DNA of 64,000 nucleotides, taken from the NCBI GenBank assembly GCA_051294905.1, contig CM119381.1:16058001-16122000 (forward strand), in the 5' to 3' direction. Below the pieces are notes generated by a model, which saw only the letters and a program-made list of their open reading frames with translations, was not told the DNA's origin and searched no databases. The position numbers and the translations under genes were made by a program. Below are positions 2,616-22,869 of the stretch, one piece after another (position 1 is the first letter of the stretch; the number at the start of each line of letters is the position of its first letter). The DNA is from Botryllus schlosseri (Eukaryota).

Positions 2616-3526
2616 TACTTCTACTTATTAGACACACTCAAGTAGGCTTTGCTCTGCTTAAAATAAGATATTACGGTATATTCTATATCTGCAAACATGT
2701 CACAAATTTGTCTACGAATGGAATCATTTGACATGGGAATCGTTTTCAATCCCTCCGCCTCTGTGTTCCCAAACATTTATTTTACAATTCTAGTGCAAGC
2801 CGGAAGAATAAATTTCTTCCCGTCCATGTGCGGTTTTGAATTTTTAGCTATTACCTCTGGTACCCTTGCCTGCACGATCTCGTTGAAACTTCGAGCTGCG
2901 CTTTGATACTATTTCATAAGATTCGTTTGATGACAATACACTCTGCCCACTACCGCATTCTCGATGTAATTAACCATTGCACCAAAAAGGCCAATCACGG
3001 TCGCCGCTAACCAATACAGAACAGAGGGTCAGAGGCGTAGGCCAATGATGCTAAGCGCATTACCACGCAAATCGCTCGCATTAGTTCCGACAAACCGAGA
3101 TAATGACCTCAGCGGCGGGGAAATTTGCTAACTGAAATAATTTGATCAACTTTACATTCTCAATTCGCCTGCAACATAACGTTGCGCTCCGAGCCTACAT
3201 TTTAACCGCAGTCCCGGTACGCTGACTGGCTGAATAATTATCGAAATGTGGATGGCTTTTCGAATTTGTAAACGTGAACATCACTTCCAAAGGAGTTCAG
3301 AAAGGCAAAGAGGATTTGAAAACTGCATTTTCGCACAGGCGCCGCATTGTCCGCTCTTCTCTGCGATCAATCAACGTATTGATATTGTGCAAAACAGCAT
3401 TGAGTCTTCAAGGCACGGGATATGTCGTTGTCGGGTGAAGCGAATTCGCGGGGGATATTGATTGCGTGCATGACAACAATTTTGATGTTTCAAATGTGCA
3501 AACTTCACACCGAGCATGATTTATAT

Positions 3527-3990
3527 CAGGGGCGGGCAACTTCTCCGGTCGGCGGGTCGGATATGGGAAAATGAAGTACTTGATGGGCCGGATTACAGAA
3601 TTAATCGCGTATTTATTTACCTATACAATGAATAAATCGTATCTAATGTAAACTTTAAGTTTAAAGCATAGAGACCAAAATCAGTATTAATGAATTTATT
3701 AGCAAACGATGATGAAGTCAATCAGAGAACTTTGCTCGATCAAAGTTGTCAACGAGTTCTTTGAAGTCTGGCTGCATGTCGTATGTAGAAACTGCAGGTG
3801 AGATGAACATCAGTTATAGTGGAGCGCAGCCTTGTCTTGTTAATGTTCGTGGTCGAAATGTATGCTAGCAAATGCATGTAGACCCGAACAGAGCAAGTAG
3901 TTTCATGATCATCTTTCTCAGGTTGGCAAACTTGGATTCATTCTGTGACGCATAAAATTTGTCGATACTTTCGTACGTTGCCCGTCTCTG
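3527..3990 (-). mobile_element. hAT deletion derivative with a GTF2IRD2/SPIN-like dimerisation-domain relic at ~3800-3942
   Basis: TIRs caggggcgggcaac / gttgcccgtctctg; perfect TSD ATTTATAT (3519-3526, 3991-3998); minus strand KFANLRKMIMKLLALFGSTCIC*HTFSTTNINKTRLRSTITDVHL. Confidence 0.9.
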
Positions 3991-4281
3991 ATTTATATTA
4001 TTGATTGTTTGCTAGAATATAATAATTTTGCGCATTCTTCAAAACTTCGAAGGAGTCTATCGCGGCACCCTTGCGAGACGTAAATGGCACACTGGTTGAG
4101 AACCAGTGGTATAGTGCATGGTAATGGTCAATGATAAAAATTTTCACCTGGAAAACTTCTCCAACCGTGAGCCTCATTTTGATAAACTATGCATCTGACC
4201 GCCGGATCACTGGGCAAATATCTTTTCAACAATGACTTGACGAATTGTCGAATCAACTATATGCGGTATTTGTCTGTTCAG

Positions 4282-4391
4282 GTAACAGCGTCATGCATTT
4301 ACGTCGCGGAACATTGGAAGACTACGCCGAGCTGTCGGAACTGAGATTGGCGAATAATAAGATATATTCGATTCAAGCTGGAACATTGAAG
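4282..4391 (+). CDS. LRR gene, first visible exon (starts phase 1 inside an LRR)
   Basis: ttcag|gt...aag|gtaata; NSVMHLRRGTLEDYAELSELRLANNKIYSIQAGTLK. Confidence 0.85.
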
Positions 4392-7300
4392 GTAATAGCC
4401 TATACAGGTCATGCAATTAAATTCTGTGGTCGGCTTGCAAATATGTGAACTCGTAACGCTTAATACCGGTGGTACATCAACATCGTTAAAGCAGGAATTA
4501 TGTAGGCCTACTACTGAGCACACGTAATAGCAAATGATGAGTAGGGCGATTTTTTTGACATGTCAAAAAATGACAAAATTGTTTACAAATTCAAAATTCC
4601 TTTGCACCCTGCATTTCGTTTGTCTCGTAGATTTTTCATTGTCGGTGAACTTATCATTTCACATTTTACAGCTTGTAGCCTACCTTATAGGCCAACCGTT
4701 GTAGACGGCCCATCGTCTGCTCACTGTGAATGATAAACATTCAAATGAGACAAATAGGTTGGCATGGTGTTACTATCGAATGTTAACATTCGATAGTGTT
4801 ATGTTCAATGTACCGTAATATCCTAACTGCAGCAGACTGCGTGCTGGGCATCGCATGGTTCTTATATTAAGAAGCGCGTGGTGAAAAATTATAATGTATA
4901 CACCATTGTCAGAATGAAGCAAAACGGTGTGTCACCAGCAGTGTACACATATCTTCAGTGTTGTCAGTCAACAACTGCTGCTGAACGTTCTTTCTCCATT
5001 CTTTGCAAGCTACTTAGTAAAGACAGCTACTTTCTACCCGATAATGTAGGAAAGTATCTTTGGTTGAACTACAACAAATTTTAATTATTTCTACCATACT
5101 ACGTGATGTAACTACTGGGATTCTTCATAGGGTCAGATTTCGTTGAAATATATTTTTTTCATGTTATAATTTGACAGTTTTTGAGTCAAAAAAGTTTTTT
5201 CAAGTCAATATCTTCACTTCGTGAGGACAAACAGTTTCAACCAGAGTTGAAGATAAGTAGTACAATTTTAACATTATGCGGGAAGACACCTAATTTGCAT
5301 ACGTTAGGTCAAAATTTGGTCGATCTTTCTGTTTTTAGGTTAATAAATCGTCCTAATGATGGGCCATTGTGTATACAAATTTCATATTGGATGACATATC
5401 TTGCCTGCAATTTTGCAACTTAACTATGTCACTGTAAACTGAAAAATGGATATTCCTGATTTTCAGCGTGCGCTGCAATGTAAACGAAAATTTTATATTT
5501 CGCTGATTTCCCCCCTAATGTATAGGGTGTAAATTCGGTAAACGGCCCTTTCATGAACCACATTGTGCTTTCACACCCTCTCAATGGTTGAAACATGAGT
5601 CAAATACACCGGAACGTTTCATAAAGGGGATTTAGAACATCACAGAACCTAGACTACGGCCCCGGCATACACTAAAATTACACATAGTTTCCATCCTTGG
5701 ATGTTTCGAAATTATAACCAGTTTCCAGCCCAGCCCCCTATTTAACTCGCGCAAGTCGGAGTAACGATTGAGGATAGCTTCTGCCGGCTTGCCATTATTA
5801 ACAAATTTACAGAGTGGAACGATTGGTTTGTCCTAGTGTTTTCGCCCTAAGGTGTTGTTGTAACTAATGTGCATATGTATTAAACCAGGGGCAGGTAACC
5901 TATTTCAGCAAAAAGAACCATATTGGACCAATATTTTCAACGAGCAGATTATGTATCCACCGCAGGCTCCTTAGTCGCAGATTATTTAATAGCTCATGCT
6001 CAATTTTTCATCTTTGATAGAGGAATTAATTACTGGAAGTGAAGCCAGTATATGATGTCGTGGCACATGATACAGAGGTCATTTCGCATGAGATGAATGA
6101 GGATTAGGCATATACATCGTGCATGGCGTTCGTCAACTTTCATGGAAGTTGCTATAACTATATTTTTCAGAACAAAAACATGGAGAAGTTGAACTTAGAG
6201 GATAACAATATCCATTTTCTCGCAAACGAGACGTTTATTCATCTGCCGAATCTGCGCTTCGTCAATATCAGTAATAATCGCCTTAAGGAATTCCCAAATT
6301 TTGAGGAAAATATAGAATTAGAAGTTCTATCAATATCGAACAATAAAATATCTGCAGTAAAAGATGGAGCATTGAAACGTAAGACACATAATAATGCAAT
6401 TATACCTCGGACACGCATTCATTGGTGATGCTCTTCTTACAGATAACACAAACCTGCGCGAGATTTATCTAAGCTCTCTGAGTATCAAATACCTGACGAA
6501 GACTGTGCTTCCCGATGACAAGTCTAACTTTACGGTGGTGGACTTGAGGGATAATCAACTGTGGACAGTACCTAGCGTCATTAAAGAAATGAAAAACCTC
6601 GAAAAACTATATCTGTCCTCCAATCCTATCAAGGTACAGTATATACTACAGCATGGGTATTGAAATAATGTGGATACAGAATGCTTTTCTACAGCAGATC
6701 ACATCGACAGTTTCCACCGTACGGCTATACCTAGTCTAAAAGTGGCGAGATGCTTAGACCCAGGTAGACTTCAGAATCTCAACCTGAGCGTTGAAGGATT
6801 ATCCTCTCTCCTCTTCCCTAATCAAACCGCGTAAGCTAGGTGTTCTTAAAATATGATCCACGAACGCCAAAGCGGCCCGTGAACTAGTTTTACGGGTCCG
6901 TGAAAGGGTAGTGTTGAACTGCAAGAAACTAGAAATCCCGATTCCTATCCTTTGACAATGACGCCGTGAGTGCTATTGTGACTAATACCTTTTCTAGTGA
7001 TAGTCGTGGAATAGCCTTAATACCGTTGAGCTTAATGTGATGACCTTCCTATTTATTTTAGTCATAGGCTTCTGAAATTCTATGGGTACGCGAAACCGCC
7101 CACAGAATTTGAGGGGGTCCGCGATCAAAAAGTTTAAGAACCCCTGGCGTAAGCTGGTCACGTGTTCAAAGTCTGCAGCTCATGAATCACAACGAAGAAT
7201 ATCGGCTTGGTGTTAAATTAAAAAACGACCAATGTACTTATGTTTTTGAAAGACCATGAATACGAAAAAAACTGCAGCCCTATACCTAAACTGAAAGGAC

Positions 7301-10300
7301 TTGTACTGCCACCACTGTCCACAATATTTGTAGTGCTTTGCCCAGCAGGAACCCTCGTTGAAACCAACTAGAGTAGCCTATATTAATTAAAATGATTGAG
7401 TCGAGTGTGAAAATTCGAATGCGGGGAAGCTTATTATAATATCGGTAACATATAGGTGGCGCGATGCAATCTCGAATTTATGGTTACTTGGTCAGATAGT
7501 CGTGTGAATGAGATTGGTGTAGGCCTACTACTGTTGACAGGCATAATGAAATACGGGACTACAATTGTATTCAGTGTTTGCTAAAGGTTGTAACTACCAA
7601 GTCCCCCTTCACGAAGTCAGTTGGGGGAAATTCAACTATATGGTGAGACTGAGGCCCCCTTTGAGTGGTACTTGAATACTTAGGCTTATAGGACTCGACT
7701 GGTAAGCTATTACACTCGACTTCTAAACGATCCTGTATAACCGTGCCGGGAAGAGGTAGGATTACAATGCAATAAAAAAAACTACTACTGCAGTAGATAT
7801 CTGTTAGTATAATCAAATCGATTAAAAACGTGTGGGCGTTTCTTTTCAATGCGAGCACGCAAACCCAGAGGTGGTCGGTAACGAAGTACTTCTACTTTTT
7901 GGAAGTACTCAAGTAGTTTTTATCTACTTCTGGTACTTACTCAAGTAGACCTTATTTTCTCGACTTCTGCTTGGTAATTAGTGATCTACTTACTTACTTT
8001 ACGTTATTTTCAGTTTGTCAAGTAGAAGTAGTTTAATCCCCCAATACGAAAGATATCCTGAGGAATTTAGGGGCTGTTTTTACGGAGTACCAACATTTAA
8101 TAGTCATAAATGTCAAGAAAAGCTCATAAATTTTGTTGCGCTCCGCGCACAGCAGTTATGGAGTGGCAAATATGTTTTCACGAAAGTATCAGTGAATAAA
8201 ATTTAGGTACCGGACTGCTTGGTTCCGCTCACACCGCATTGTCGCCTATATCAAATATTTCAATACAATAAATAGGGTCCACCATAACGTTTGAAACTAC
8301 CGTTTTGCAATGTAGCAATTACCTACCATATAATAATCTATCAGCCGATAACGTGTCCTGCTAATCTGGAAAATCCGGCTTTTTTAAGGTTACACCTGTT
8401 TCAGCAGATCACCTTTGAAGCTTTATGGACAAAAGCCACGAAATATATTTCCCGCTTTTTATGTAGTGGCATTTGTATTTCAGTTTCAATTTTTTCAACG
8501 AACACAACAGTCATATTCGCAATTTATCCACTTAAAGCTTTTCAACTGACCCTCGTCGGGAGTGGCCGTCAGTAAATACGGAGATTGCAACTCGAAATAT
8601 AAAGATGAAATATAGGTAGTGTGACGTAAGAATGGTATAACAACAACAACAACAGCAACAACAACAACAACAACGAGAGAATTCACAAAACGCGAGCGTT
8701 GAGCAAAAATGCAATTAGTGCTATGCAAATTGAGTATCATACTTTAATTTCTAATTACTTCAATTCTTTTGTCTACAGAACATACATGTTGAAGCATAAA
8801 AGCAAGTGTTGTAATGCCTCTATTTTTCGAAAATAAAGCTACACTAAATATTAATTTTACGATTCACAATATTTGTTATTAACGTATACTAATCGCGCAA
8901 AATATTGATACCATATCCGATACAACTAGCTTATCCGTATTGCTCTCCGCGCCATGCCACGATATTGTCTAAAACCGGGCCTTCTAGCAAGCAAAGGGTT
9001 AGTACCGCATTTCCATATCAATACTATAATTCGCATCCCATGATGCGAAAGAATGCTTATTCTGCCGAAAATCGATTCCTCCTGGGTGCATCAATATACG
9101 AATCAAGTTCTTTGCACCTATACCGCATAGCTCAATTTGCAGCTTTTGTCAGTCCATGCGAACGAATTAAGACTGTTTTCAATACTACTTACTTACTTGA
9201 GTAGATTTAAAGTCAGTCAATTCTACTTCTACTTAAAGTAGTTTTAGGTGACTCATGAAACAAGTACTTCTACTCGTACTTGAGTATATTTTTTTCGTCG
9301 CTACTTCAACTTCTACTTGAGTAACTTTCTTGACTACTTTGACATCCTCTGCGCAAACCACGTACTTTCAACTGCAGACGTTCGCGTCTCAAGATTTTCG
9401 ACCACTCGGCAAGCTAAGAGCATTGGAGATGGCGAACGTCGGAATGAAGGAAGTACCGGAAAATTTATTTTGGTTGCCGCTACTGAAGCATCTTGACATA
9501 AGCCGTAACCAGATCAGTGGGAGTTCTCTGCGAAATATTCAGTTCTCCAACCTCGCGACCCTAAAAATGGATGGAAATCGTATTGGAATAGTTGGTTAGC
9601 AGTGATTTTATGAGAGTATCTTCTCGGTCAATCTTCTTATCAACCTGTATATTTCACTGAACAGCTGATGATGCCTTTGCGGGAATACCAAATTTGGAAG
9701 TGTTGGCCGCTAGCTCGTGTGATATATCCGTTGCGCAAGCCCGTGCATTCACCACGTTACTGAAGTTAAGAATATTGGATCTTAGTAGTAATAAGTACGC
9801 ATCGTAATGGCAATAATGATTTACAATTGCAATCAGTAGTAATGAAGTTGAAGCCTATATCTACTATCGGTTGTCGATCAAGGTTCATTTTGGGCTCTGT
9901 AAACATTTCAGCTTGAATACCCTCCCGACATTGCAAGAAAACAGATACCTTGAAGAGCTATTTCTCGACAATAACGAAATACAAGCACTGAATTTTAACA
10001 GTTTCAAGTAAGTTTTTTAAAAATATGTTTTTCTTTTTTTTCAACATCATTTGGTAGGTTATTATGGAGGAGCACATCAGTATATACTATGGGTCTACAC
10101 TGCAGTCAACATATTGATTATAATTTATAAATTATAATCACAGACACTCAAACTTTTTTGGACACCCCCCTTGATGACAGTGACAAAATTCGCGCCCCCT
10201 TATCGTCATATCAAAAAGTATTTAAAAGAGCAACCATGAATGTTTGCAATCCCAACGCATACTTTGATGGCATGAAAGGTTATCATTAGTGCAAGTTTTT

Positions 10301-13300
10301 GTCGCAGTTAAATCCGTGGAAAGTTGCATTTATTTTTCACAAAAGTTGCAGTAAAAAGTTGCATTTATTTTTTTCACAAAAGTTGCACCGAAAGACCACA
10401 TTTTGGTCGGTTGACTAAAAAAGGGTCAACTTTTCGGCTCAGCTCCCGAAATACGTTAGAGCGTTACTTCAGTGCTGATTTACGGTATTTCAGTCGAATT
10501 TGGCCGTATATTTCACCAAAATTCTCAAAAAAACAGTGACATAATCAAGCGATCTATTTACATATACTGCCAAATATTCCAGTAAAAAGTTGGTTGTATG
10601 ACGAAAAAACTTTCATGAAAAATCGAAAAAGTTGCATAATGTTGCAATATAAGATTCCTTCAAACAGCTTAAAACAGCATTCTACAAAACTTCCGAGTTT
10701 TGAGAAGCTGTAAAAAAAGTTGCAAAAGTTGCAAAATCTTGCCCTAGTTATCACTGTTGAGAGAACTCTCGATTATGAAATCCGGACTAGACTCGGGGCA
10801 ACAACTATGAGATGAAAGCAAATCGCACCGAGCGTGAAATTAATTTCAGTTGAATAGTTTGTCAAGAATGATCATGTTTAATGGTAGCATGTATAGCGCT
10901 AGCAGACACATTACAGATAGGCCTATTTAAGCGATTTTGGTGTCTGTTCCCTTCTATTTCTTAATTAGGTTTGGTTGAAACGTATAGCTGACCATAAGCT
11001 GAATCAAAAACCAATGGCGCTAGCCAGCACACGCCATTCAATCTCGGCCCTTCTTAGCGGGACAATTAATAATAATCTTTCTGTTCGGCAAGAGAATCAT
11101 TAGTTTGATCACTTTCGGGCCGCCATAAAATGAGCTGCTTAAGAGCTGCATTCCACAAAATGTGTCCTAATTGAGTATACTCGGAGGGGCTACACCGACG
11201 TTCTAAGCCACTTCGTTTTAAATCCATGTATCTTCTTTCAAAAAGCATATTATACATGATATATGGCTTGGTCCTAATAGCAAATATCTTATTTCTCCAT
11301 AAGTTTGTGTCTTTCTAAGTAATCGATCTGCATAGACATACAGACTGACAGATAGGTCACAGATGACCACAGATGCTTGACAGACAGGCCATAAAAGCAT
11401 CATCTAACTACACGCATTCACCAGCTAATCTTATTTCAAAAACATCTTCTGATCGGTTTAAGGTCCGGTTTCAGTCATAATCTAGCGTCAGTGTATGGGT
11501 ATTGCGACGCCACTATGACATTTAAATCGCAATTTAACTGGGACTAATGCCGTTATTTAAACTTGTAACTCTCAGCGAAAATTAAACTAATTACAAGTTC
11601 ATAAAATTTACTTCTCTCAGGTGACTTTTCGCGCCTCCTTCAGATGCTTTCACATTCCTCTACCAGTATGAGAACCACTGCTGTAGATTGTGACCTGAAA
11701 GGATAAGTCCGAAATACTCGGTGAAGTAGTCTATAAGTATATCAAACACTAACTTGTCAGCAAGTAGATAATAAATCAAGTTGATCAGAGGCAAGCACAA
11801 CACTTGCACCTGCACCGCAAATGAAAAACTGTTGAATTAAATTTACTCATGATGCAGGTCGACCTTCATTAAGTACAATTTATAAAAATGTGTTGACACT
11901 TCTCGATCACAAAAAATAAAACAGCACATCTAGGATTCAAACTCTCATAAGTAACAGAAAATTCACTATGAATTGTGATCTCGACTTCAGTTCGGTTTAT
12001 TAGCAACTTTTATCAGTTCAATACACCAGAAAAATTGCGACATAATGAAAAGATAGGAAGGTGTCGAAACGACTTGGAGTAGTTTTCGGAATCAGACGCC
12101 AACCTGGGCCTAGTCGATTTAAAGGGGAGGCATGCACACTGAATGAAAAGTAAAAGAAGATAGTATAGAAGTAAGCGACAAAATACGATGATTCGGGTCA
12201 TTCCTGCTACACAAAAGAGCTATAGTTTTTCTGCTCAATATTTATCACGTATTGTCATTTTCACTGCAGAAGAATGGAAAACCTAAGGCTGTTGTCGCTA
12301 GCTAACAACTCGTTAACTACTATTGGGAGATCATACCTTCCCGGCGAATTGACTATTACAACGCTTAACCTTTCCGGAAACAAATTTCAATCGCTTCCTG
12401 GGGCGATAGTGGACGAGTTGACTCGTCTGAAATCTCTCGACATGTCCGCGAATTCAATATACGGCGAATTTCCTCTTACGTCAATCTCAGGTGAACTACA
12501 TAATTTTGATGTATAACGAGTGTTTGTAATTTTTATGGTTAGTTCTTAACTCTTGACGTTCTTCAGATCTTGAAAACTTGCAAAGCTTCGATTTGAGGCG
12601 CAATAACATCAGCAAAATTTCGCCCGACACAGATACAATATTTTGGAGCATAGAGAAATTGTATCTTTGCGAGAACAATATCACCGAATTGGACAGCTCG
12701 GTTCTTGACAAGTGAGATATATACCTGCGATTATGTGTAGAACTTCATATGTCACTATGTATTGTAGGCCTATATGTATTGAAACATTCAGATTTCCCCA
12801 ACTTGAAGAGTTGTACGCTGACGGCAATTCAATCGAGACGATTTCAGATTCGAGTTTCTACTACAATCCGTTTCTTCGAAAGTTGTTTTTGAATAGCAAT
12901 TCAATCAAGGAAATTTCGGGCGATGCATTTTCACAATTAACCGAACTTGATGAATTGATGCTGATGGATAACAGTGTGAAGGTGTGTGGATCGGCGGTAA
13001 ATACGCGACAGAGGTGGTCCAACGTATTCGTTGACGTTAACTCAAATAGGAGCGGGATCGTGTTTACCAACGCGTATAGAAGTGGAAAACCGTAGATTTG
13101 AAAAGTGAACAATTGTAAATAATTCTGGAAAAGAGTCTTTTGAGTAATGATTCCAACTAACATGTGGCGGATTTCAAAGTTGCAGTTGGTAACGCATCTA
13201 CCAAACGAACACATAGGATGTCTAATATTGCGAAGAGGTGCACTTTCCAACTAATTTTTGGAAATAGTTGCGATGAGGAGCTATAGTTGCCAACAAAAAA

Positions 13301-16300
13301 ACTGTCATCCGCCAAGGGGGAATGTGACTTGGAAAATTGTTCAATGTTCATACTTGCTAGTATTATAACAAACATAACTGAATATGCCACAACCAATTTT
13401 CATAAGTCATTGAGCATTGCCGCTTTCAGTAGGACTTAATTATTGTTGAAATATTTTTTGTAATTTCGGTGTCTGAGGAAGACAACGGGATGGTGCTAAC
13501 CCCAAACAGGTTCTGGTTCGTGCGAAAACGAATGTACACAACACATTAAAATTTCAAACTGTTGTGATGATACTATATGTACGTGGGATACTCTCACAGG
13601 GTAGCGGAACCGGAGTCGTGGTGCTTTAGTTTCATTAAAGTTTTTCTTGGTGGAGTCGGAGTCACAAAAATTGTGTAACCCGATTTGGAGTCGTCGTTAG
13701 GACTATACATGTACTAGCTGGAGTTGCTAAAATGCTGACCCCGGCGACTGTAAATTCAAATCAAATGTTCTCAAATCTTACTAAAAAGTGCCATTGAAGT
13801 TATTTATATATATCAGGGATGGCTATTCACGGTCGAATTTCGATTACTTATGTAGCCTAAGGCAGCATTTCCTGGACATAGTCGCAGCGAATTAGCTGGA
13901 CACCAAATACTCATGTTAAACTGTCCATGTCCATTTCCGGCGAACTAATCTACTTCTTCATATCGTCTTACAATGCGCATCGAAATCACTATGGTGGTCA
14001 TGTAATGAATAGTTACTGGGAGTGGTTATAGTCGCGCGATGCGCGAAAAACTTTTCAGATTCTCGAATGAATTTCGCCAATAATATATTAGCATTTTCAC
14101 ATATCACTATCAAATATTTATCCTTTATCAGCCGATGTGATCAGATTCACCGGTAGAGTTAATGGAGGGAGTATTTTCGAAAATTTAGGGCAAGTTATAA
14201 ATCAGTGGTTCCTAACGTGGGCGATTTTGAGAAACGAGGGGGCGAAAATGCCAAAGGGGGCGAATGGGGGGCGATGGGGGCGAAAATGTTAAGACGTTCA
14301 GTGAGATGTATTTAAGGAAGTGTCTATAGGGGTCCGGTACCGAACGAATAGACGTAGACGCTTTCTCAGGCTATTTGACCGGCAGATCTGTAAGCCACCC
14401 TAAATGTTATAGTGTTCCCGAATCAGACACTTAAATATATATGTAGCAGATGCTTGGATGTGGGGAGTTACCGAGATGCGGCACCATGCCGGTAGTTATG
14501 TACCGCATAGCGGTGGTTTGGTACGTTGTACGCCTCTTTTACAGCGTCGAGTCCCGCAGGACAGATCAGTAACCAGACCTGGGTAGCGAATAAATGACAG
14601 TCAACCGAGGTCTCTAAAATGGTTCACATTGTCCCAACGGTCCGTGGACACATGATCATGTCAGCATTTGACACTTCAGCGTACTACGATTGGGCATGCG
14701 ACGCTTCATAATGTGGGTAAAATTTGGGTTTAGGGTCGGGTAAGGTTTAGAACAGCGGTTCTTACACTTTTTAGACACGCCCCCCTTTATGGTAGCGAAA
14801 AATTTCGCGCCCCCATTATTGTCATATAAGAAAATGCAACTAGAATGCTCGCAATCCTAACGGATATTCTGATGGCATAGAAGGTTATGAGTGGTGATGA
14901 GAGAATTCAATAATATGATATTCGGATGATACACAGGGCAAAAACAATAAATTGGAGGTAAATCGCGCGGATTTTTCCGGTACCGGACGAGTAATCACTG
15001 CCTATATTTAATTAACACGGTCAAAAATGCACGTCAAGACGGCTCATTCTGCACATGACAAAATAAAAGGTCAACTAACTGGAGAGTAGACGCGGAAACC
15101 AGTTTTCCGAGCACCTACCACCTTGGAAAAAATGGGCTTTTTTCAGTAAATTCACCGCTCACCAGCGATCAGACTATATGTCCTCTTTTTTTCGAATCTG
15201 TAAATATGGGGGCGAAAATTTGTGTCGAGGTAGATAAGGGGGCAATCAGTCTAAAAAGGTTGGGAAACTTTGTTATAAATGATGATGCATATTAGGGTGG
15301 GCCAATTGGTGTTGGTCACTTTGTTTCATGCTGTTGTTTCTTGACCTCCCATCAAGATTGTCGGTATAGTGGTGAGATATTAGAATCTCCCAGACGTACC
15401 AGAAACTAATTTCTTTCCAGTGGAGCACACGATTCCGGATCTGTACTTTGGGGTTCAGAATGCAAAGGAGGGAATCAGCAATTATATTGCGACTTCAAAC
15501 TGGACACTGTAAATTGAACTCGCACCTCCAACGCATGGGTTGTCACGACAGTGGTCTCTGCGAAACGTGCAGCGTACCAGAAACTGTCGAACATTTTCTA
15601 CTGACGTGTCCTCGATACAATCACCAGAGACAATATTTAAAAAACGTAGCCGAACGTAGCAGTGTGAGCTTTTCGTTGGAATGTCTGTTAACTGATCCGC
15701 ACATGGTTAATGCGATCGTAGAATTTGCTGTCTTGTGTAGGCATATCTGATTCAACTATAGCTCCCTCAGGCCTGGTGCACAAGACCCTAGTAGTCGAGC
15801 ACCATAAAACCCCTTATACATACATACTATATATTTAAATTGAAAATGAAGTCGCATTGAATCGCGCCCCGAGCGAATAAAATTTCAAGATCAATTAGAT
15901 CTCTCAAAGAATAAGTAATCTCTCAAAAAATCGGGAGACAACTCGTAAATTCAATTTTCATGTCGACGAACTCCAACGCATACTAATTGAATTACGTGAC
16001 CACGGTCGCACAGATTTCGTTCTGCCTCGGCAGGCTGTTCACCCCTGATTATTAATTATTAATATATTATGCAGTTTTTCACGTAGGCGGACCTTCAAAA
16101 ACTTAATTTCTTTCTTAGAGCACATTTTTTAAATATATAAAATAGGTTGATTCTCTTGGTAATAATAATAATAATTAATAACCGAAAATTTAACAAACGA
16201 TAAAAAAACTTTTGAGTTGATTATTCCAGGAATGTTGGTGTCGGTATATTGAAAATGTCTGCAGTAGGAGTTGGAGTCGGTAGTCAAGTGAATCGACTCC

Positions 16301-19300
16301 ACAGCCCTGCCCTGAAATCATGTCATATATGTTAACCAATGAATGCTATTTTCGTGATGCAGGACGTTCCAAAGTTATCAAATAATATTGGACTCAAAGC
16401 TCTTGGTCTTTGCAATAACCCGATCGGAAGTATGGGGAGCGCAGCTTTATCCGGACCAAAAGGATTGGAGACCCTTCTCCTTCGTGGAACCGAAATCTCA
16501 ACATTGCAAGCGGACGCGTTTGGCGATGTTAGCAGCATTGAAAATCTGGATCTAGCGAACAATAATCTGTCATCAATTCCAAACGTGGTGAGCATGCCGG
16601 GCATTAACAAATCCGTGAAAAGGCAATGACATCCCATCGAGACAGTTAATTTTAAATTTAGAGTGTTTTATGGAGAATAATGTCAAATGGAGTCTTATTG
16701 CTAAAGAAATGCAAGAACGATGAAATATAAGATAAAATCCATTAATTCTTGTCATAGATCATTGGACCTGGACAGTGGACATGTTGTATGTATAATTGTA
16801 TATGTATGCATTAATGGTCACAACACAGTCGAGCTTATCGCCTTGTTAGGCCTTGTTCTCCACGACACGCATTTCATAGTGTTCACGAGTCTTTGCGTTC
16901 TTGTATTCCCGTGGACGTCTTTCAATCTCTCTAGCAGTCATTCTTCATTATCTCGCTCTCCCATGAGTCCCCATCGTGGACGTTGCTGCCGACTTGTAAC
17001 TTGGTTTACCTTACGTCTGGACTTTTCAATGCACTGAAGCAGTAGTGAGGTTGGCAACGAGTAGACCAGTTAAACCTCCGACACGTAGAAGTTGGTCAGA
17101 GCCGGGAATCTAAAGCGCTTTCATTGGTGTCGTGACCCTGGGAGTTCAACCAACTGTGCCATCTGAGCTTCCCTTCCCGGATAGGTTATTTGCTGTGGGG
17201 TAACCAAGTTCTCCGTTTTTCAAAAGGTACGCAGCATGACTTCACTTCGTAGTCTTGAATTGTCTGGAAATCCAATCGCAAAAATGCCGCCAGATGGTTT
17301 AACAGGACTAACGGGCCTTCGTGTCATGCACCTTGATAAAATGAAATTGTCCTCCTTGGATGTAACGGAGTTGGTATTCATTATGCCAGGACTCAGGTGA
17401 GTGCTCAATATCTGCGTTCCTCGGCTATCGAAATTTATATAGCAAATATTTTTTGTGAAGCTGTTTTGATATTTTACAATTGTAAAGGTGGACTGTTAGT
17501 TTTTTGAATTTAATTTTTATTGTTTATCATTCGTATACTCTTATCTAATAATATCTGGAGCAAAGATATCGCGTATTTACCTACCCCATGTTAGCTTCAA
17601 AATTTGGAAAGAACTTTCTGACATTTTGTCGTATCATCACAAGCTTGAAAAAGTTATATGTGTCGTAAATACATTTTTATCCAATTGTTGAAAATGTATA
17701 CTTATAACTAGGTCTGGGCACAATGATTCGAGTACTCGAATCTGAATCTAGTATTAATTTTAATGATAATAACACATTTCTGAAGTCATAATCATATCAC
17801 AACATTGTCACAAAGTGCAATGAAATCGGCATGGCCGAAAAATACCATAGGATCTTTAATGTGATGGAAAACAGGCATGCTATTCTTTGATGTGGCATAA
17901 AAGGTACATATTTCCACTTTGACATACTATATTTTGTTATGACGTCATAATGAGTGATACTCGAATACTCGACTCGACTCGAAGCATAATACGTGATTCA
18001 GAATCGAATCACTCAGGTATATCCGATTTTGCCCAGCCCTACATAAAACTGTGACTAGGGTTGCATTTAAAACAAAAATCAATTTGAAACAACCATGTTT
18101 AGAATATAGCCATCGCTTTATTGTGACGTCAGAGTGGATTGACCTAGACAATTGAAAATATATGGTAAATATGGCTCCTTCGACGAAAAGAGCTTCCGAT
18201 CACTGTCATAAACAGACTAAAAATATCTTTAATCAGTACTACATCGTTATGCAGCATTTTTACGGTCGGCAGTCTTCATCATCAGAACCCTCATTCTGAT
18301 ACCAATGATCTACATACGTGTCATAACTAGTGACCCAACGACGATTTCGAGGATGCCAGCCACCTAACATCGAATACGTCGTCCATATTGGGTAAAAATC
18401 GTCCGTAAAGACTCATACTTTATGTTTTTTCGGGAGTTATACACCATTAGGAAATAATTATGAAAAAAAAATCGTTTTAAAAATAGGCATTTCCCATCCG
18501 GAGACTGTCTATGCTCCGCCCTTGTAACCTTGTCCGCTGACGGAATGAAGAGTCATGACTTTTGTATCCCATCGCCGTGAGTGATGATATATGGGATTGC
18601 AAGTTAACTATTATATCTCAGGCTAATTTTTACAGAGTCACGCAAATTATTATTTTCAATTGATGATCATGGCGCACTGTAAAAAGATTTTCCAATCATA
18701 TTATTTTATTTTACTTGTGGTTGCGTGCGGGGATAACGAGCTCTATAGATATCCCTGGTCGCAAAGAGCAACATGAAATCAACTGATCTAAACTGAACCA
18801 TAACCGAGTTAAAACAAGAAATCAATAACATTAGTTTGTGTGCTGTTATTGATACACCACAACAAACTTTACCTCGAATTTTCATTGGGCTTTCACGGAA
18901 CCCTTGAAACTAGTGAAATGACCCCTGATATATGGTGCCTCTGGTCTTGAGGGCAGTTGAGATATTGGGTCTCTCTGTCCTAGTCTCGGTCAGGGATATC
19001 TAGAACTACGGAACTTCTAGAAATCACACCGTTAGTCGAACACCTTGCACATTGTACCCAGAGAACATACCCAGCAGTTGATGGAAGCGCACATTGACAG
19101 ACAACATTACTAAAGACTAGCGAAAAGAGTGTAGGCCTATTTCCGCCCGTGTACTACCCCGGATATAAGGGTGTGAATATACACCGATGTCACACGAAAC
19201 CAGAGCATACCTAAGACTTATACCGCTGTATAAATCGAGTAAAACATTTTCATCCAAATCAGACAAATGACACATGCATGGCTACCAGCACAGGGTCGCA

Positions 19301-22300
19301 AAATGAAGTTACCGCCGTTGCTATCGGAATGATCACCCATTTAATTGCGGAATTAAACTGCGAAAGACTTAATGACAAAAAACAACACACCGTTACCTAT
19401 CGAAACCCAATAAAGCTGAACCTATAGAACTCGGAAACCGTATACGTCTTACAGGCACGTCTTTCACGTCTGATAGCGGGATGAGTTTCGCCTTGTTTAT
19501 GCTCGTTTCGTGTGACGTTACACACTGGGTGCCCAATTCCGTAATTCTAGACATCCCTGATGTCAGTATGAATATTATAAGTTAATATAATATTAACATA
19601 GTATGGTTATTGCTCCATATTTCTGCGCTTTTTGTACTTCATGATTGTCGAAATGAACAGGTCGCCTTTTCAATGTAACTCGTTGTATTTTCTCGCTGAA
19701 TAGCCTATGCAAACCCTACGAGAACGTATTATGTTTCGCTTTAAAAGATCCATGTGGCTAGCCGGAAATCCTTGGCGGTGTGATTGCGAGATGGAGGCCT
19801 TGGCACTGGGAATCGACATTGGTCGTTCTCACGTGGAGGTTGCTGATCGATCAAAAATGGTTTGCGTCTCTCCAAGCGGCGTCCACGGCAGATTTATGGA
19901 CACTCTGGATATGGGAGATTTTATGTGAGTAATGAAACTACACTTTTTATTTGCTGGAAGATCAATCTTTTCGTGGCAACTCAATGTTATGGCGTTTTGA
20001 ACAGAAAAGAATGAAAAAAATCACTATGGTGTACTGCAGGGGTGAGGACTCTTACCGTTTTTTCGTCGCTTGATGTCGTATTAACTACGAATCAACCGGT
20101 GTCCGGTCAATACCGAGAATGTTATTACCGAGAATGCTATTACCGAGAAGGACAATACCGAGAATGGACAATACCTAGAATGGACAATACCTAGAATGGA
20201 CATTACCGAGAATGGACACCACCGAGAATGGATATTACCGAGAATGCAATATATGCAATACAGGCATGTTACACATATGAACAGATCGTGTGTGTGCATC
20301 ACGGCGTTGCCACATTCGGTATCGATTCTCAGGTATAAACTTCTCGACAACGTCCGTTACAGTAAGCTAGATTCTTGGCATTGTCCATTCTCGGTAATGT
20401 CCATTCTCGGTAATGTTCGTTCTCGGTAATGTCCGTTCTCGGTAATGTCCATTCTCGGTAATAGCATTCTCGGTAATGTCCATCTCGGTAATAGCATTCT
20501 CGGTAATAGTATTGAACCGAATCAACCTATCGTTGTTACCAATGTACCATACCAATCTACGTATTCAATTCCAAATTGCTTTTCTTCGCTTGACAATTTC
20601 ACCAATCAATAATCGTTAGATTATATTTTCATCTGAACAAGACACACACACAATGTGATGTAATGAACAGATAGGAGGATGCCGAACGACCAGTTGTGGT
20701 CTCTTAAACTGGCATCCACCTCGGCCTAGTGCCCGGTGTGACAGTTCCTTTGCAGATGTTAGTCTCTATTCCGTGGCTCTATCTTGCTCTTTCCGTTCTT
20801 TGTGAGTGCGCTCTTTCATCGGGTCTTTTTCAGGACTTGTTTTGTCGCCGTAAGAACAGCGACGCGGGTGAAGAGGAACCCTACTACTATGCATGAATGC
20901 CTTATCCCTGGCATCACAGAACAGTTCCCGTCGCTATAAATCTATTCTTATATGCACTTTTTTATGCAGTAGCTCTAATTTTTATTCTATTAAAAGGCAA
21001 TGTACACCAAGCAGAATTATAAGTATACACGAAAACAGCGCTCTAATGCGAATTCCCGTATTTGGAGAGAACGTGTTGAGCACTGTATCCTACGCATCGA
21101 TCCCAGGAATAGAAAAAACTGTCAACGTTGCTGCTGGAATAAGGTATATAACTAAAACTTCATGCAGCTTACCCGGCTGTACAATTCACAAACAATTATT
21201 ATAATTTAAAATTATTCAGGCAAGTTAAGCTTCGCAACTTAATTCCGGATACCAATTATATCGCCTGCGTGTATGCGAAGCATCAAGAACGCTCCTCATT
21301 TATGATTAGCGAACAAGAACCTACAACGCGCAATCATAACTCACACTCAGAATCTTGTATCAAGGTGAGTCAGTTTGCATATGGAAGACTGAACGTGGGC
21401 GTGTGACTATAGGTGGGCTATAGGCGTCACTGATATCGATTCGAATGGTTTTGATGTCGTACGATTAGATTCAAGTCTTTCGAATTCGAACATCAAATCA
21501 GATCATTCGAAGCAAATTTGCCGATAGAAGCACATTGCAGGTACACTATATTTTCTGATTTGGCAAAGCGTTTCGTCTGACAGCTCCCAATAACTATGCG
21601 GACATGTCAGAGTCGATCACGCACTTAAAGATCGCGTAAAACCTGGATCGGTGGCGTAAAACATCATCGGTATTTTAATCCAATTGATAAAAATCATTAA
21701 AAATAACGATTCGATTGGGATGTGGACTTTGCTCATCCAACAGATTGAATTTATTTGGTCTTACCAGTAATTTTTAAAGGGCGGTCACAGTTGCGCATGA
21801 TCGATTTGCGATGAAATTGTGGGTCCATTCAGAATACATATTAACTATACGCCATAACTATATGCCACGATTTACTGTATCAAAATGGCGTCCCAACAAC
21901 ACTCCCAATATTTGAAATAACGAAGTGAACACTGTAGGACAGGGGCAGCGAACCCGTCGCTTGTAAGAAGTTTCTGAGTGACCCAAGCGGTAATTTTATA
22001 GAAATTCGTATTATTATCAAATTAATCGATGCCTTAATTTATTCTGAACTTGCCAGGTCAACCCAAAATCTGGTTAGCCTGACCGCGAAATTGGTGTGCT
22101 GATGATACTGATGACTTGGCTTTTAGTCATCAGCTACCTTTTCCGGCATGAACCTTTTTGTTCGACGGGCCACATGCGGTTTACGAAATATTGTGCGGGC
22201 GATTTGAGTGCCGTGGTCTGGATGGAAGCGATGACATTTTTTCAGTCATCAGCACTCAAATCGCCCGCACAATATTTCGTAAAGCGCATGTTACCTGTCG

Positions 22301-22869
22301 ACCAAATAGATTGGCCGCCGATCGATTGACACACGATGAAGCGCGGGCCACATATGGTATCGCGACTCGTGAAGCTGAACCAGCACGATCCCGTTTCAGT
22401 TCAGAACAACGCACCAGCGACTCGATAAGCCGTGGCTGAAAGGGGGATTCGGAGGCCCGGAATTCCGATCGCGTAATCTTCTGATCATCTATCTTGTTCT
22501 GAGCGGCGTAATTTTACTGTCACTCATGGTAGTATCGCTAACTTTCTCCTCCTGGTACAAAAGGTAAGACGCTGTGTGTTGGACTTTAGCGTGGGGTTGA
22601 AAGAAATGTATTCCGCTCTTTCAAGACGAAAGACTACGCTCAAAGACAATATCACTAGGAACGACGCAGTCGACTTTCATGACGTATTAGAGAATATTGA
22701 TTCGAGTCTCGATAAAGGTACAGAACCAGTTGAAGACAATAAAATCAAAAAGCCGAAACGAACACAAAAGGATAAGCAAAACGGTACTGTGATGGAAATG
22801 ACAAACGAAGGCGGATGCGATAACGAGGCGTGTGACGGCTCGACTACGCCGCAACGAACGAAACTTTGA
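4282..22869 (+). CDS. LRR-LRRCT-FN3-TM type I membrane protein, 5'-incomplete: join(4282..4391,6171..6378,6443..6633,9378..9594,9665..9794,9912..10007,12270..12490,12567..12711,12792..12981,16363..16587,17227..17396,19748..19924,20997..21143,21220..21364,22400..22563,22626..22869)
   Basis: All 15 introns are GT..AG with matching phases, and the 2780 nt join reads open to TGA at 22867-22869. It contains 27 LxxLxLxxNxL-type repeats, LRRCT (GNPWRCDC...CVSP), an FN3-like segment (KLRNLIPDTNYIACVYA), a TM (LLIIYLVLSGVILLSLMVVSLTF), a basic stop-transfer (YKRRK) and C-terminal RTKL. Confidence 0.88.
4920..5084 (+). pseudogene. hAT transposase C-terminal relic
   Basis: LQCCQSTTAAERSFSILCKLLSKDSYFLPDNVGKYLWLNYNKF* contains the hAT dimerisation ERSFS motif. 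Confidence 0.65.
6171..6378 (+). CDS. LRR gene exon
   Basis: ttttcag|aac...c|gtaaga; three LRRs (MEKLNLEDNNI, LRFVNISNNRL, LEVLSISNNKI). Confidence 0.92.
6443..6633 (+). CDS. LRR gene exon
   Basis: cttacag|at...aag|gtacag; follows a 64-bp intron; three LRRs. Confidence 0.92.
6837..7146. mobile_element. hAT MITE, 310 bp
   Basis: TIRs taggtgttcttaaa / gtttaagaacccctg; perfect TSD GCGTAAGC (6829-6836, 7147-7154). Confidence 0.9.
7866..9351. mobile_element. hAT-like non-autonomous element with TACTT/AAGTA subterminal repeats, 1486 bp
   Basis: TIRs cagaggtggtc / gacatcctctg; perfect TSD CGCAAACC (7858-7865, 9352-9359). Confidence 0.88.
8639..8674. repeat. (AAC)n microsatellite, about 12 units, one AGC variant
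   Basis: Read directly from the sequence. Confidence 0.95.
9378..9594 (+). CDS. LRR gene exon
   Basis: ctgcag|acg...g|gttagc; LRALEMANVGM, LKHLDISRNQI, LATLKMDGNRI. Confidence 0.9.
9665..9794 (+). CDS. LRR gene exon (absent from the ORF track)
   Basis: gaacag|ct...aa|gtacgc; ADDAFAGIPNLEVLAASSCDISVAQARAFTTLLKLRILDLSSN. Confidence 0.9.
9912..10007 (+). CDS. LRR gene exon (absent from the ORF track)
   Basis: tttcag|c...aa|gtaagt; LNTLPTLQENRYLEELFLDNNEIQALNFNSF. Confidence 0.92.
10141..11680. mobile_element. hAT MITE family X copy, expanded by nested insertions
   Basis: 10141-10286, 10747-10845 and 11620-11680 are collinear with the intact copy at 33463-33780; right TIR gagaaccactg; no TSD match. 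Confidence 0.7.
10287..10746. mobile_element. hAT-like MITE with AAGTTGC repeats, nested in the family X copy
   Basis: TIRs tagtgcaagtttt / aaatcttgcccta; TSD GTTATCAT / GTTATCAC (7/8). Confidence 0.8.
12270..12490 (+). CDS. LRR gene exon
   Basis: ctgcag|a...g|gtgaac; three LRRs. Confidence 0.92.
12567..12711 (+). CDS. LRR gene exon
   Basis: cttcag|at...aa|gtgaga; LQSFDLRRNNI, IEKLYLCENNI. Confidence 0.92.
12792..12981 (+). CDS. LRR gene exon
   Basis: attcag|a...aag|gtgtgt; three LRRs. Confidence 0.92.
14203..15272. mobile_element. hAT non-autonomous element with GGGGCGAA repeats, 1070 bp; contains a partial family X copy from 14753
   Basis: TIRs cagtggttcctaacg / ggttgggaaactttg; perfect TSD TTATAAAT (14195-14202, 15273-15280). 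Confidence 0.85.
15420..15827 (+). mobile_element. 5'-truncated I-group LINE (Nimb/I/Outcast-like): ORF2 C-terminal zinc knuckle and 3' end
   Basis: RRESAIILRLQTGHCKLNSHLQRMGCHDSGLCETCSVPETVEHFLLTCPRY; short 3' UTR with hairpin and (TACA)n tail. Confidence 0.88.
16363..16587 (+). CDS. LRR gene exon
   Basis: atgcag|gac...gtg|gtgagc; three LRRs. Confidence 0.92.
16785..17178 (-). mobile_element. tRNA-derived SINE, family B
   Basis: The minus strand has an A-box tggcacagttgg and a degenerate B-box. Central blocks are shared with SINE family A (acacca, tctgacc, ggaggttta, aaagt/gcc.agac/tgt, taca/taagtcggcag). TACA-like tail. Confidence 0.65.
17227..17396 (+). CDS. LRR gene exon (absent from the + ORF track)
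   Basis: ttttcaaaag|gta...ag|gtgagt; VRSMTSLRSLELSGNPIAKMPPDGLTGLTGLRVMHLDKMKLSSLDVTELVFIMPGL. Confidence 0.9.
17709..18041. mobile_element. hAT-like MITE, TAGGGCTGGGCA family
   Basis: TIRs taggtctgggca / tgcccagcccta; ACTCGA repeats; homologous to 30495-31005; degraded TSD (6/8). Confidence 0.85.
18056..18300. mobile_element. Partial MITE, TAGGGTTGCATTTAAAAC family
   Basis: The left end and interior match the 60349-60744 copy; right limit approximate. Confidence 0.65.
19748..19924 (+). CDS. LRR gene exon, LRRCT
   Basis: The phase-2 acceptor tttcgctttaaaag|a gives ...MPGLR-SMWLAGNPWRCDC; donor at|gtgagt. Confidence 0.85.
20098..20518. mobile_element. Foldback element with inverted tandem arrays of a 15-16 bp unit (TACCGAGAATG core)
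   Basis: About 9 units at 20111-20246 and about 8 reverse-complement units at 20381-20507; flanking direct repeat CGAATCAACC (20088-20097, 20518-20527). Confidence 0.85.
20997..21143 (+). CDS. LRR gene exon, end of LRRCT and FN3 N-half
   Basis: ctattaaaag|g...ag|gtatat; QCTPSRIISIHENSALMRIPVFGENVLSTVSYASIPGIEKTVNVAAGIR. Confidence 0.8.
21220..21364 (+). CDS. LRR gene exon, FN3 C-half
   Basis: attcag|g...aag|gtgagt; QVKLRNLIPDTNYIACVYAK...ESCIK matches the FN3 L..L.P.T.Y...V.A motif. Confidence 0.85.
22400..22563 (+). CDS. LRR gene exon, juxtamembrane and transmembrane helix
   Basis: cccgtttcag|ttc...ag|gtaaga; FRTTHQRLDKPWLKGGFGGPEFRSRNLLIIYLVLSGVILLSLMVVSLTFSSWYKR. Confidence 0.85.
22626..22869 (+). 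CDS. LRR gene terminal exon, cytoplasmic tail
   Basis: 62-bp intron ending ctctttcaag|a; RKTTLKD...GCDNEACDGSTTPQRTKL*. Confidence 0.8.

What the first reader, a model, noticed from the sequence alone, without database searches (positions are those of the whole stretch)
4282..22869. Very long LRR-FN3 single-pass receptor (at least 27 LRRs) with no Ig or TIR domain and a PDZ-binding tail
Seen: the reconstructed 16-exon frame gives at least 27 LRRs plus a partial one, LRRCT, one FN3, a TM, and an ~85-aa tail ending R-T-K-L (class I PDZ motif S/T-x-hydrophobic). Established: vertebrate LRR+FN3 receptors (FLRT, ELFN, TRIL) have this domain order but far fewer LRRs, roughly 5-13. Several synaptic LRR adhesion proteins end in PDZ ligands, and Toll-like receptors need a TIR, which is absent here. 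Inference: a lineage-specific expanded adhesion, guidance or immune-recognition receptor that may have no one-to-one ortholog. Five exons are invisible to the ORF track.
Basis: partly seen in the sequence, partly recalled or inferred. Interest (0 to 1): 0.7.

Follow-up and report, generated by a model that had tools for sequence, protein, structure and literature searches.

The report
Long LRR-FN3 membrane receptor gene
A real, transcribed sea-squirt gene encodes a 992-residue single-pass surface protein with 28 leucine-rich repeats, one fibronectin-III-like domain and a short tail; its architecture is a known kind but unusually long, and I found no close relative and have no evidence of its function.

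Summary
On the + strand, 16 GT-AG exons between 4282 and 22869 join into one open frame. I also found the missing first coding exon 234-432 nt upstream of the window start (L005:9568-9766). It carries a signal peptide, an LRRNT cap and the start of LRR1.

The complete CDS has 17 exons, 2979 nt and 992 aa. Its order is signal peptide, LRRNT, 28 uninterrupted LRRs (22-25 aa each), LRRCT, one divergent FN3-like domain, a TM helix and an 84-aa tail ending RTKL. There is no room for an Ig or TIR domain.

Spliced contigs from a public run confirm the last five junctions. They also removed an FN3 exon I had guessed wrongly.

The gene appears single-copy in this genome. No relative above 45% local identity appeared in a 1.84-billion-protein library. 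An 84%-identical copy of the LRRCT exon exists in one other public run.

The same domain order with a long LRR array exists in arthropods (about 43 LRRs, auto-named artichoke-like or chaoptin-like) and in vertebrate TRIL. My protein matches the arthropod C-terminal module only weakly (45.7 bits against 95-358 for members).

The PDZ reading rests on three residues and is untested. Verdict: a new member of a known kind, of modest interest.

The parts
1..4281 (+). 3' part of intron 1. The first coding exon lies outside the window, 234-432 nt upstream of base 1 (L005:9568-9766 = G000:C11:16057568-16057766). It encodes Met, a signal peptide, the LRRNT and the start of LRR1.
   Evidence: LRRNT pattern scan and translation. 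Donor TGACAG|gtaagc in phase 1 fits the phase-1 acceptor at 4282 and restores a 24-aa LRR1. The full CDS is open. There is no RNA evidence for this junction. A dispersed repeat of about 960 bp lies at 1658-2615.
4282..4391 (+). Coding exon 2: end of LRR1 and LRR2.
   Evidence: Acceptor ttcag|GT, donor AAG|gtaata. Pfam LRR_8 E 0.025.
6171..6378 (+). Coding exon 3: LRR3-5.
   Evidence: Splice sites. Pfam LRR_8 E 2e-11.
6443..6633 (+). Coding exon 4: LRR5-8.
   Evidence: Splice sites. Pfam LRR_4 E 1.5e-7.
9378..9594 (+). Coding exon 5: LRR8-11.
   Evidence: Splice sites. Pfam LRR_4/LRR_8.
9665..9794 (+). Coding exon 6: LRR11-13.
   Evidence: Splice sites. Pfam LRR_8 E 4e-6.
9912..10007 (+). Coding exon 7: LRR13-14.
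   Evidence: Acceptor tttcag|C, donor CAA|gtaagt. Own LRR HMM E 1e-4.
12270..12490 (+). Coding exon 8: LRR14-17.
   Evidence: Splice sites. Pfam LRR_4 E 7e-10.
12567..12711 (+). Coding exon 9: LRR17-19.
   Evidence: Splice sites. Pfam LRR_8 E 7e-7.
12792..12981 (+). Coding exon 10: LRR19-22.
   Evidence: Splice sites. Pfam LRR_8 E 7e-14.
16363..16587 (+). Coding exon 11: LRR22-25.
   Evidence: Splice sites. Pfam LRR_8 E 2e-11.
17227..17396 (+). Coding exon 12: LRR25-27.
   Evidence: Splice sites. An X1 contig covers 17226-17393 and joins to 19746. Pfam LRR_8 E 4e-5.
19748..19924 (+). Coding exon 13: LRR28 and LRRCT (NPWRCDC ... C ... C).
   Evidence: Junctions 17396|19748 and 19924|20997 in RNA contigs and reads. 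PDB LRRCT matches at E 1e-4. An 84%-identical copy exists in another run.
20997..21143 (+). Coding exon 14: first half of the FN3-like domain.
   Evidence: Junctions 19924|20997 and 21143|21220 in an X1 contig. Aligns to the fn3 A-C strands of the arthropod module HMM. No Pfam hit alone.
21220..21364 (+). Coding exon 15: second half of the FN3-like domain (VKLRNLIPDTNYIACVYA) and the juxtamembrane Cys motif (SCIKFRT).
   Evidence: Junctions in an X1 contig. Pfam fn3 E 0.02, profile positions 51-76. 20.3 bits to the arthropod module for the FN3 part alone. Language-model neighbours are all fn3 clusters.
22400..22563 (+). Coding exon 16: juxtamembrane stretch and the transmembrane helix (residues 884-907).
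   Evidence: Junctions 21364|22400 and 22563|22626 in an X1 contig. Hydropathy scan gives one helix only.
22626..22869 (+). Coding exon 17: cytoplasmic tail ending R-T-K-L, then the stop codon. The 3' UTR runs on past 22999.
   Evidence: The X1 contig runs from 22623 through 22999 and has 282 nt more. No Pfam family on the tail. No paralog in the genome.

Best explanation
Shown. This is an intact gene that appears single-copy and is transcribed at least across its last five junctions. It encodes a 992-aa type I membrane glycoprotein of the extracellular-LRR class. The order is signal peptide, LRRNT cap, one uninterrupted solenoid of 28 typical LRRs (consensus LxxLxLxxNxIxxL), LRRCT cap, one divergent FN3-like domain next to the membrane, a conserved Cys-basic juxtamembrane motif, one TM helix, and an 84-residue tail with no Tyr and no catalytic, TIR or death-type domain.

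Inferred. It most likely works the way TRIL works. The large curved LRR surface binds an extracellular ligand or a partner receptor. The FN3 holds it off the membrane and may add a second contact. Having no signalling domain, the protein passes information through the receptor it pairs with or through adaptors on its short tail. The terminal T-K-L may be one such docking site.

The architecture is shown. Ligand, partner and cell type are unknown.
For: - Open 2979-nt CDS over 17 GT-AG exons.
- Five junctions in spliced contigs of X1 and in raw RNA reads of X20.
- 28 repeats of 22-25 aa with Asn at position 9 in 23 of 28.
- Pfam LRR families on 10 of the 11 in-window LRR exons, six at gathering score, and LRRCT matches in PDB.
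- FN3 supported.
- A single TM helix and a tail without Pfam hits.
- No paralog of the LRRCT or tail exon in the 495-Mb genome.
- The C-terminal module (LRRCT-FN3-Cys-TM) aligns colinearly with arthropod LRR-FN3-TM proteins: 45.7 bits, against at most 6.2 for 200 shuffles, and pairwise z = 18 to P0115.
- TRIL is described as a single-pass protein with multiple LRRs, one FN3 and a small intracellular domain lacking obvious motifs. Both its FN3 and its intracellular domain are needed for signalling (PMC6004582).
- Dolan et al. place KIAA0644 (TRIL by my identification) and the FN3-bearing fly CG40500 in the Toll-related LRR group (PMC2235866).
Against: - No functional or expression-pattern data exist. 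Depth in the laid runs is low (about 10-15 in contigs, a few raw reads).
- Similarity to the arthropod family is weak: members score 95-358 bits on the same model. 27 of my 45.7 bits come from the generic LRRCT.
- TRIL itself could not be compared, because no sequence was reachable for a spliced query.
- The exon 1 to exon 2 junction and the ten junctions between exons 2 and 12 have no read evidence here.
- Long LRR arrays also serve pure adhesion, as in chaoptin.
Confidence: 0.45

Rival explanations
1. A PDZ-anchored adhesion or guidance molecule. The LRR array would bind a partner on another cell in trans. The C-terminal T-K-L would dock the protein to PDZ scaffolds at junctions or synapses, as in the LRFN/SALM, NGL or FLRT type of action.
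For: The tail ends R-T-K-L, which fits the class I pattern S/T-x-hydrophobic. LRR-FN3 single-pass proteins of vertebrates (FLRT, ELFN, LRFN) act in neural adhesion (PMC2235866). The fly FN3-bearing relative CG40500 is expressed only at the CNS midline (PMC2235866).
Against: A three-residue motif is expected by chance in roughly 3% of proteins (my estimate from residue frequencies). The arthropod look-alikes I inspected end ..TEC and ..FAC. No ortholog tail was available to test conservation. Known synaptic LRR organisers carry 5-12 LRRs, not 28. TRIL, which has the same architecture, did not mediate homophilic adhesion (PMC6004582).
Confidence: 0.25
2. A TIR-less Toll-type recognition protein of innate immunity. 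It would be a decoy or accessory chain for the true ascidian TLRs, in the manner of RP105/CD180 or TRIL with TLR4 and TLR3.
For: It has an uninterrupted array of 28 typical LRRs capped by LRRNT and LRRCT, a size in the range I recall for TLR ectodomains (about 19-27 LRRs; from memory, not tested here). One of the best PDB matches of the LRRCT is Drosophila Toll. Ciona has TIR-less TLR-like LRR membrane genes expressed in hemocytes (PMC12816324). CD180 lacks a TIR and regulates TLR4 (PMC2235866).
Against: No TLR has an FN3 domain. LRR similarity is generic: the best PDB and library hits are designed LRRs, plant receptor kinases and giant LRR proteins. No expression data place it in blood cells. 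The gene appears single-copy and shows no sign of diversification.
Confidence: 0.2
3. The gene is not functional as modelled. It could be a decaying gene, a mis-joined model, or a protein that is mainly shed or secreted, like the matrix protein Artichoke.
For: Low read depth. The FN3 lacks the usual B-strand Trp and misses Pfam's threshold. No polyadenylation hexamer was found within 630 nt after the stop. Eleven junctions are unverified by reads.
Against: 992 codons are open across 17 exons with all-canonical splice sites. Spliced transcripts were found. An X1 contig differs from the genome at a synonymous site. The LRRCT exon is 84% conserved at protein level in another run. The TM helix is strong.
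Confidence: 0.05

Closest known systems
[quoted passage not shown]
   Same: Signal peptide, LRRNT, LRR array, LRRCT, one FN3, one TM, and a small cytoplasmic domain without recognisable signalling motifs. No Ig and no TIR (PMC6004582). Grouped with the Toll-related LRR proteins (PMC2235866).
   Different: TRIL has about 13 LRRs (from memory) against 28 here. Sequence relatedness was not tested, because no TRIL sequence could be reached with a single-exon query. TRIL's tail is not reported to end in a PDZ ligand.
Arthropod long LRR-FN3-TM proteins, auto-named 'artichoke-like' or 'chaoptin-like' (e.g. XP_050690603.1 from Eriocheir, P0115; probably the group of fly CG40500)
   Same: A very long uninterrupted LRR array, LRRCT, one fn3 (Pfam E 7e-13 in P0115), a Cys-x-basic-x-R-T motif after the FN3, one TM and a short tail. 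The match to residues 700-920 here is colinear.
   Different: They are about 1330-1550 aa with about 43 LRRs. My protein scores 45.7 bits on their C-terminal module against 95-358 bits for members. LRR identity is about 25%, which is generic. The tails I inspected end in Cys (..TEC..FAC), not S/T-x-L. Function is uncharacterised.
FLRT1-3 and ELFN1/2, vertebrates
   Same: LRR block with caps, one FN3, one TM, no Ig (PMC2235866).
   Different: 10 LRRs (FLRT, from memory) and 6 LRRs (ELFN, PMC2235866). ELFN has a long Tyr-rich tail, while this tail is 84 aa without Tyr. Sequence relation not tested.
Chaoptin and Artichoke, Drosophila
   Same: Long uninterrupted extracellular LRR arrays. Automatic names of the nearest library proteins point here.
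   Different: Chaoptin is GPI-linked and Artichoke is a matrix protein (from memory). Neither is defined by an FN3 plus TM.

Membership tests
Extracellular LRR superfamily, LRR_Ig/FN3 or Toll-related class of Dolan et al. 2007 | Signal peptide plus an extracellular LRR block with Cys-rich caps | tested here: met
   The signal peptide and LRRNT (first exon) were found by pattern scan only; Pfam and PDB searches of that exon found nothing. 28 LRRs (Pfam). LRRCT.
Extracellular LRR superfamily, LRR_Ig/FN3 or Toll-related class of Dolan et al. 2007 | FN3 domain between the LRRCT and the membrane, type I TM | tested here: inconclusive
   The TM helix is clear. The FN3 falls below Pfam's threshold (E 0.02, 15.5 bits against a cut-off of 25, on half the domain). 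It is supported by 20.3 bits to Pfam-verified fn3 of arthropod proteins and by fn3-only language-model neighbours. The whole domain could not be scanned or folded because it is split by an intron.
TRIL | Domain order LRRNT-LRR-LRRCT-FN3-TM-short tail, without Ig or TIR | tested here: met
   compared with the description in PMC6004582.
TRIL | Orthology by sequence (reciprocal best hit or phylogeny) and about 13 LRRs | not testable with these tools
   Searches accept only unspliced references. Single exons cannot reach full-length proteins (length filter), and the one unfiltered search was swamped by giant LRR proteins. The LRR number differs (28).
Arthropod long LRR-FN3-TM family (artichoke-like / CG40500-like) | C-terminal module LRRCT-fn3-Cys motif-TM at family-level similarity | tested here: inconclusive
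   Colinear match of 45.7 bits, with shuffles at most 6.2. Members score 95-358 bits, and unrelated LRRCT proteins reach 20-47 bits.
Arthropod long LRR-FN3-TM family (artichoke-like / CG40500-like) | About 43 LRRs and 1330-1550 aa | tested here: not met
   28 LRRs and 992 aa, against LRRCT positions near residue 1085-1200 in members.
Toll-like receptors | Cytoplasmic TIR domain | tested here: not met
   The tail is 84 aa with no Pfam family. That is too short for a TIR of about 140 aa.
LRFN/SALM, LRRN, LRIT, LINGO, LRIG | Ig domain after the LRRCT | tested here: not met
   LRRCT ends at Cys762, the FN3-like domain covers about 763-857, and the TM starts at 884. No residues are left for an Ig domain.
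Class I PDZ ligands | C-terminal S/T-x-hydrophobic, conserved in orthologs and bound by a PDZ domain | tested here: inconclusive
   The pattern is present (T-K-L). Conservation and binding are not testable here. The arthropod look-alikes I inspected lack it.

The most novel reading that the evidence does not exclude
The gene is a deuterostome survivor of an ancient bilaterian lineage of long-array, TIR-less, Toll-related LRR-FN3 membrane proteins (arthropod CG40500 / 'artichoke-like' proteins). Vertebrate TRIL would then be a shortened descendant. Tunicates would keep a near-ring-sized recognition ectodomain that works beside their few true TLRs.
Probability: 0.2. Interest if true: 0.5.

Novelty: new member of a known kind. 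Interest (0 to 1): 0.3.

Why it matters
If the model is right, ascidians carry a cell-surface protein that appears single-copy and has an uninterrupted LRR array about as long as I recall the longest TLR ectodomains to be. It is coupled to an FN3 domain and has no signalling domain. That gives one more data point on how the Toll-related LRR-FN3 architecture (TRIL in vertebrates, uncharacterised long forms in arthropods) is distributed among bilaterians. It also gives a candidate partner chain for the very small ascidian TLR set. In itself it is an uncharacterised member of a large and well-known receptor class. The main practical gain here is a complete, partly RNA-verified gene model that includes the first exon the window had cut off.

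Tried and rejected
1. FN3 first exon. I guessed an exon at 20659-20801 (...LLNWHPPRPS...), and 20970 as an alternative acceptor. RNA contigs join 19924 directly to 20997, and that stretch is a high-copy repeat.
2. More LRR exons upstream, prompted by the arthropod proteins aligning my residue 1 to their position about 410-470. None was found in 40 kb upstream or in the rest of the window by phmmer or a repeat HMM. A first scan for a phase-1 donor after an LxxLxL pattern found nothing convincing. The LRRNT pattern scan then found the true first exon.
3. Library search with exon 16363-16587. There were 8748 hits, but the top 150 were giant LRR proteins. The best local identity was 45%, so no ortholog was recognisable.
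4. Word-indexed searches. The C-terminal region of P0115 returned crustaceans only. An alignment of four arthropod proteins plus my 17 exon translations aligned poorly, and the top 120 hits were almost all arthropods.
5. A metagenome scan with the LRRCT exon found no relative.
6. PDB search with the first exon found nothing. With an LRR exon it returned only generic LRR hits.
7. Atlas search with P0067 returned only arthropod-type LRR clusters.
8. No AATAAA or ATTAAA within 630 nt after the stop.
9. Not done. 
Full report
**What is there.** The window is G000:C11:16058001-16122000 of a 495-Mb assembly. All open segments with LRR signatures lie on the + strand between 4236 and 17397. I took the best AG and GT sites that keep the frame. 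The segments then join into a chain in which every junction restores the 22-25-residue LRR period.

The chain runs on through an LRRCT exon, two FN3 exons, a TM exon and a tail exon to a stop codon at 22867-22869. That makes 16 exons, all GT-AG, with 925 codons open.

A repeat HMM built from the gene hits only these exon segments in 104 kb on both strands. The exon hits have E 5e-4 to 8e-16 and the best noise hit has E about 1. Pfam calls LRR_8 or LRR_4 on 10 of the 11 in-window LRR exons, six at gathering score. The LRRCT exon matches the caps of GPIb-beta, a VLR-like protein and Drosophila Toll.

**The missing start.** No further LRR exon exists in 40 kb upstream. A scan for the LRRNT cysteine pattern found one open segment 193-477 nt before the window start. 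It holds an ATG, a signal peptide (MSCAMARAKSLYYVMLIMLFTKSAES), a C-x3-C-x-C-x7-C cap and VPDLPENTTVLDLTG. It ends at a CAG|gtaagc donor in phase 1.

Joined to 4282, this exon completes a 24-residue LRR1. The full CDS is 2979 nt in 17 exons, giving 992 aa with no internal stop. The exon is L005:9568-9766. The junction is inferred from phase, motif and period, not from reads.

**Transcript evidence.** No indexed run is on record as RNA. Even so, several runs hold 0.2-0.26 of the sampled words of 17000-22999, which is about the exonic share. I laid X1, X13, X20 and X24 on that stretch.
- One 810-nt contig of X1 joins 17226-17393 to 19746-19903. With the single extra T, this is junction 17396|19748 plus a synonymous C>T at 17394.
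- One 1132-nt contig of X1 joins 19924|20997, 21143|21220, 21364|22400 and 22563|22626, and runs into the 3' UTR.
- Two raw RNA reads of X20 also show 19924|20997.

This disproved my own guess of an FN3 exon at 20659-20801, which lies in a high-copy repeat. The 810-nt contig has 483 nt lying upstream of the laid stretch. That is consistent with exons 9-11 but was not examined. Depth is low.

**The protein.**
- Signal peptide at about residues 1-26, and LRRNT at 29-59.
- 28 LRRs at 60-723, with consensus LxxLxLxxNxIxxL. Asn is at position 9 in 23 of 28 repeats. There are no insertions and no internal Cys cluster.
- LRRCT cysteines at 712, 714, 740 and 762.
- FN3-like domain at about 763-857, and a Cys855-basic motif (SCIKFRT).
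- TM helix at 884-907.
- An 84-aa tail without Tyr, holding a basic cluster and ending RTKL.
- Nine N-glycosylation sequons in the ectodomain (derived).

Nothing is left over for an Ig or a TIR domain, and the tail has no Pfam hit.

The FN3 is the weakest element. Pfam gives E 0.02 on its second exon only and nothing on the first. Three other lines support it:
- The second exon's language-model neighbours with a Pfam family are all fn3 clusters.
- The whole region aligns strand by strand to Pfam-verified fn3 domains of arthropod proteins.
- The FN3-only piece scores 20.3 bits on their model.

**Relatives.** The LRRCT and tail exons have no paralog in the genome. The one unfiltered library search (exon 11 against 1.84 billion representatives) returned giant LRR proteins. 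The best local identity was 45%, so no cluster representative at 50% identity or more exists there.

Comparing the joined protein locally with the fetched proteins singled out P0115 and its kin. These are arthropod proteins of 1330-1550 aa, auto-named artichoke-like or chaoptin-like. They have about 43 LRRs, an LRRCT, a Pfam fn3, a TM and a short tail.

An HMM of their C-terminal module matches residues 700-920 colinearly at 45.7 bits, with shuffles at most 6.2. However, true members score 95-358 bits, and 27 of my bits come from the LRRCT alone. I therefore read this as the same architecture and possibly distant kinship, not membership.

One 45-aa ORF from another public run is 84% identical to the LRRCT exon and reads into the same intron stop. 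So a related ascidian or a divergent haplotype carries the gene. A metagenome scan found nothing.

**Literature.**
- Dolan et al. 2007 (PMC2235866) place KIAA0644, which I take to be TRIL, and the fly gene CG40500, both with an FN3, in the Toll-related LRR group.
- Kim et al. 2018 (PMC6004582) describe TRIL as a single-pass protein with multiple LRRs, one FN3 and a small intracellular domain without obvious motifs. Both the FN3 and the intracellular domain are needed for signalling, and TRIL shows no homophilic adhesion.
- Shiraishi et al. 2026 (PMC12816324) show that Ciona has TIR-less TLR-like LRR membrane genes expressed in hemocytes. I could not test whether one of them is the ortholog.

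**Reading.** The architecture is settled and the function is inference. The most economical model is a ligand-binding or accessory chain that signals through partners, in the TRIL manner (0.45). The rivals are a PDZ-anchored adhesion molecule (0.25), a TIR-less Toll-type immune accessory (0.2) and a non-functional or shed product (0.05).

The PDZ idea rests on T-K-L alone. By my estimate that is about a 3% chance pattern, it is absent from the arthropod look-alikes I inspected, and it is untested in orthologs.

**Verdict.** This is a new member of a known kind, notable mainly for its 28-LRR array among deuterostome LRR-FN3 proteins. Interest is 0.3.

Noticed in passing
window 52699-53061 and 62643-62981, + strand: A Pax3/7-like gene lies about 30 kb downstream of the LRR gene. 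It has a paired-box exon (Pfam PAX E 7e-31) and a paired-type homeodomain exon (Pfam Homeodomain E 2e-14). It could serve as a synteny anchor when looking for the LRR gene's ortholog in other ascidians.
   Followed up: partly
window 1658-2615: A dispersed repeat of about 960 bp, with at least 40 copies across the chromosomes at 86-90% identity. It sits in intron 1 of the LRR gene. An overlapping 141-aa open segment has no Pfam family.
   Followed up: partly
window 20000-20900 and 17600-18400: Intronic repeats with summed word depth in the thousands to tens of thousands in runs X1 and X13, and many loose-ended RNA reads. The first holds two inverted arrays of a 16-bp tandem repeat (20108-20246 and 20371-20507).
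   Followed up: no
window 15376-15747 (+) and 32326-32682 (-): Retroelement remnants. One is a zf-RVT-like zinc-binding piece inside an intron of the gene (Pfam E 8e-5, below gathering score). The other is an RNase H piece downstream (Pfam E 1e-10).
   Followed up: partly
L003, L004 and L006 (13.9 to 32.5 kb upstream of the window start): A cluster of long retrotransposon-type open frames that read as integrase- and reverse-transcriptase-like by eye (not scanned against Pfam), including one of 1219 aa on the + strand. No cellular gene was seen between them and the LRR gene's first exon.
   Followed up: no
P0271 (Logan run SRR25569784, contig of 1766 nt): A 45-aa ORF that is 84% identical to the LRRCT exon and ends at the same intron-encoded stop. 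It is genomic DNA of a related ascidian or a divergent haplotype.
   Followed up: partly
G000:C4:23966878-23967042: The only other genomic match to the LRRCT exon (31% identity, E 0.008). It lies in a 716-aa uninterrupted open frame, which suggests an intronless LRR gene.
   Followed up: no
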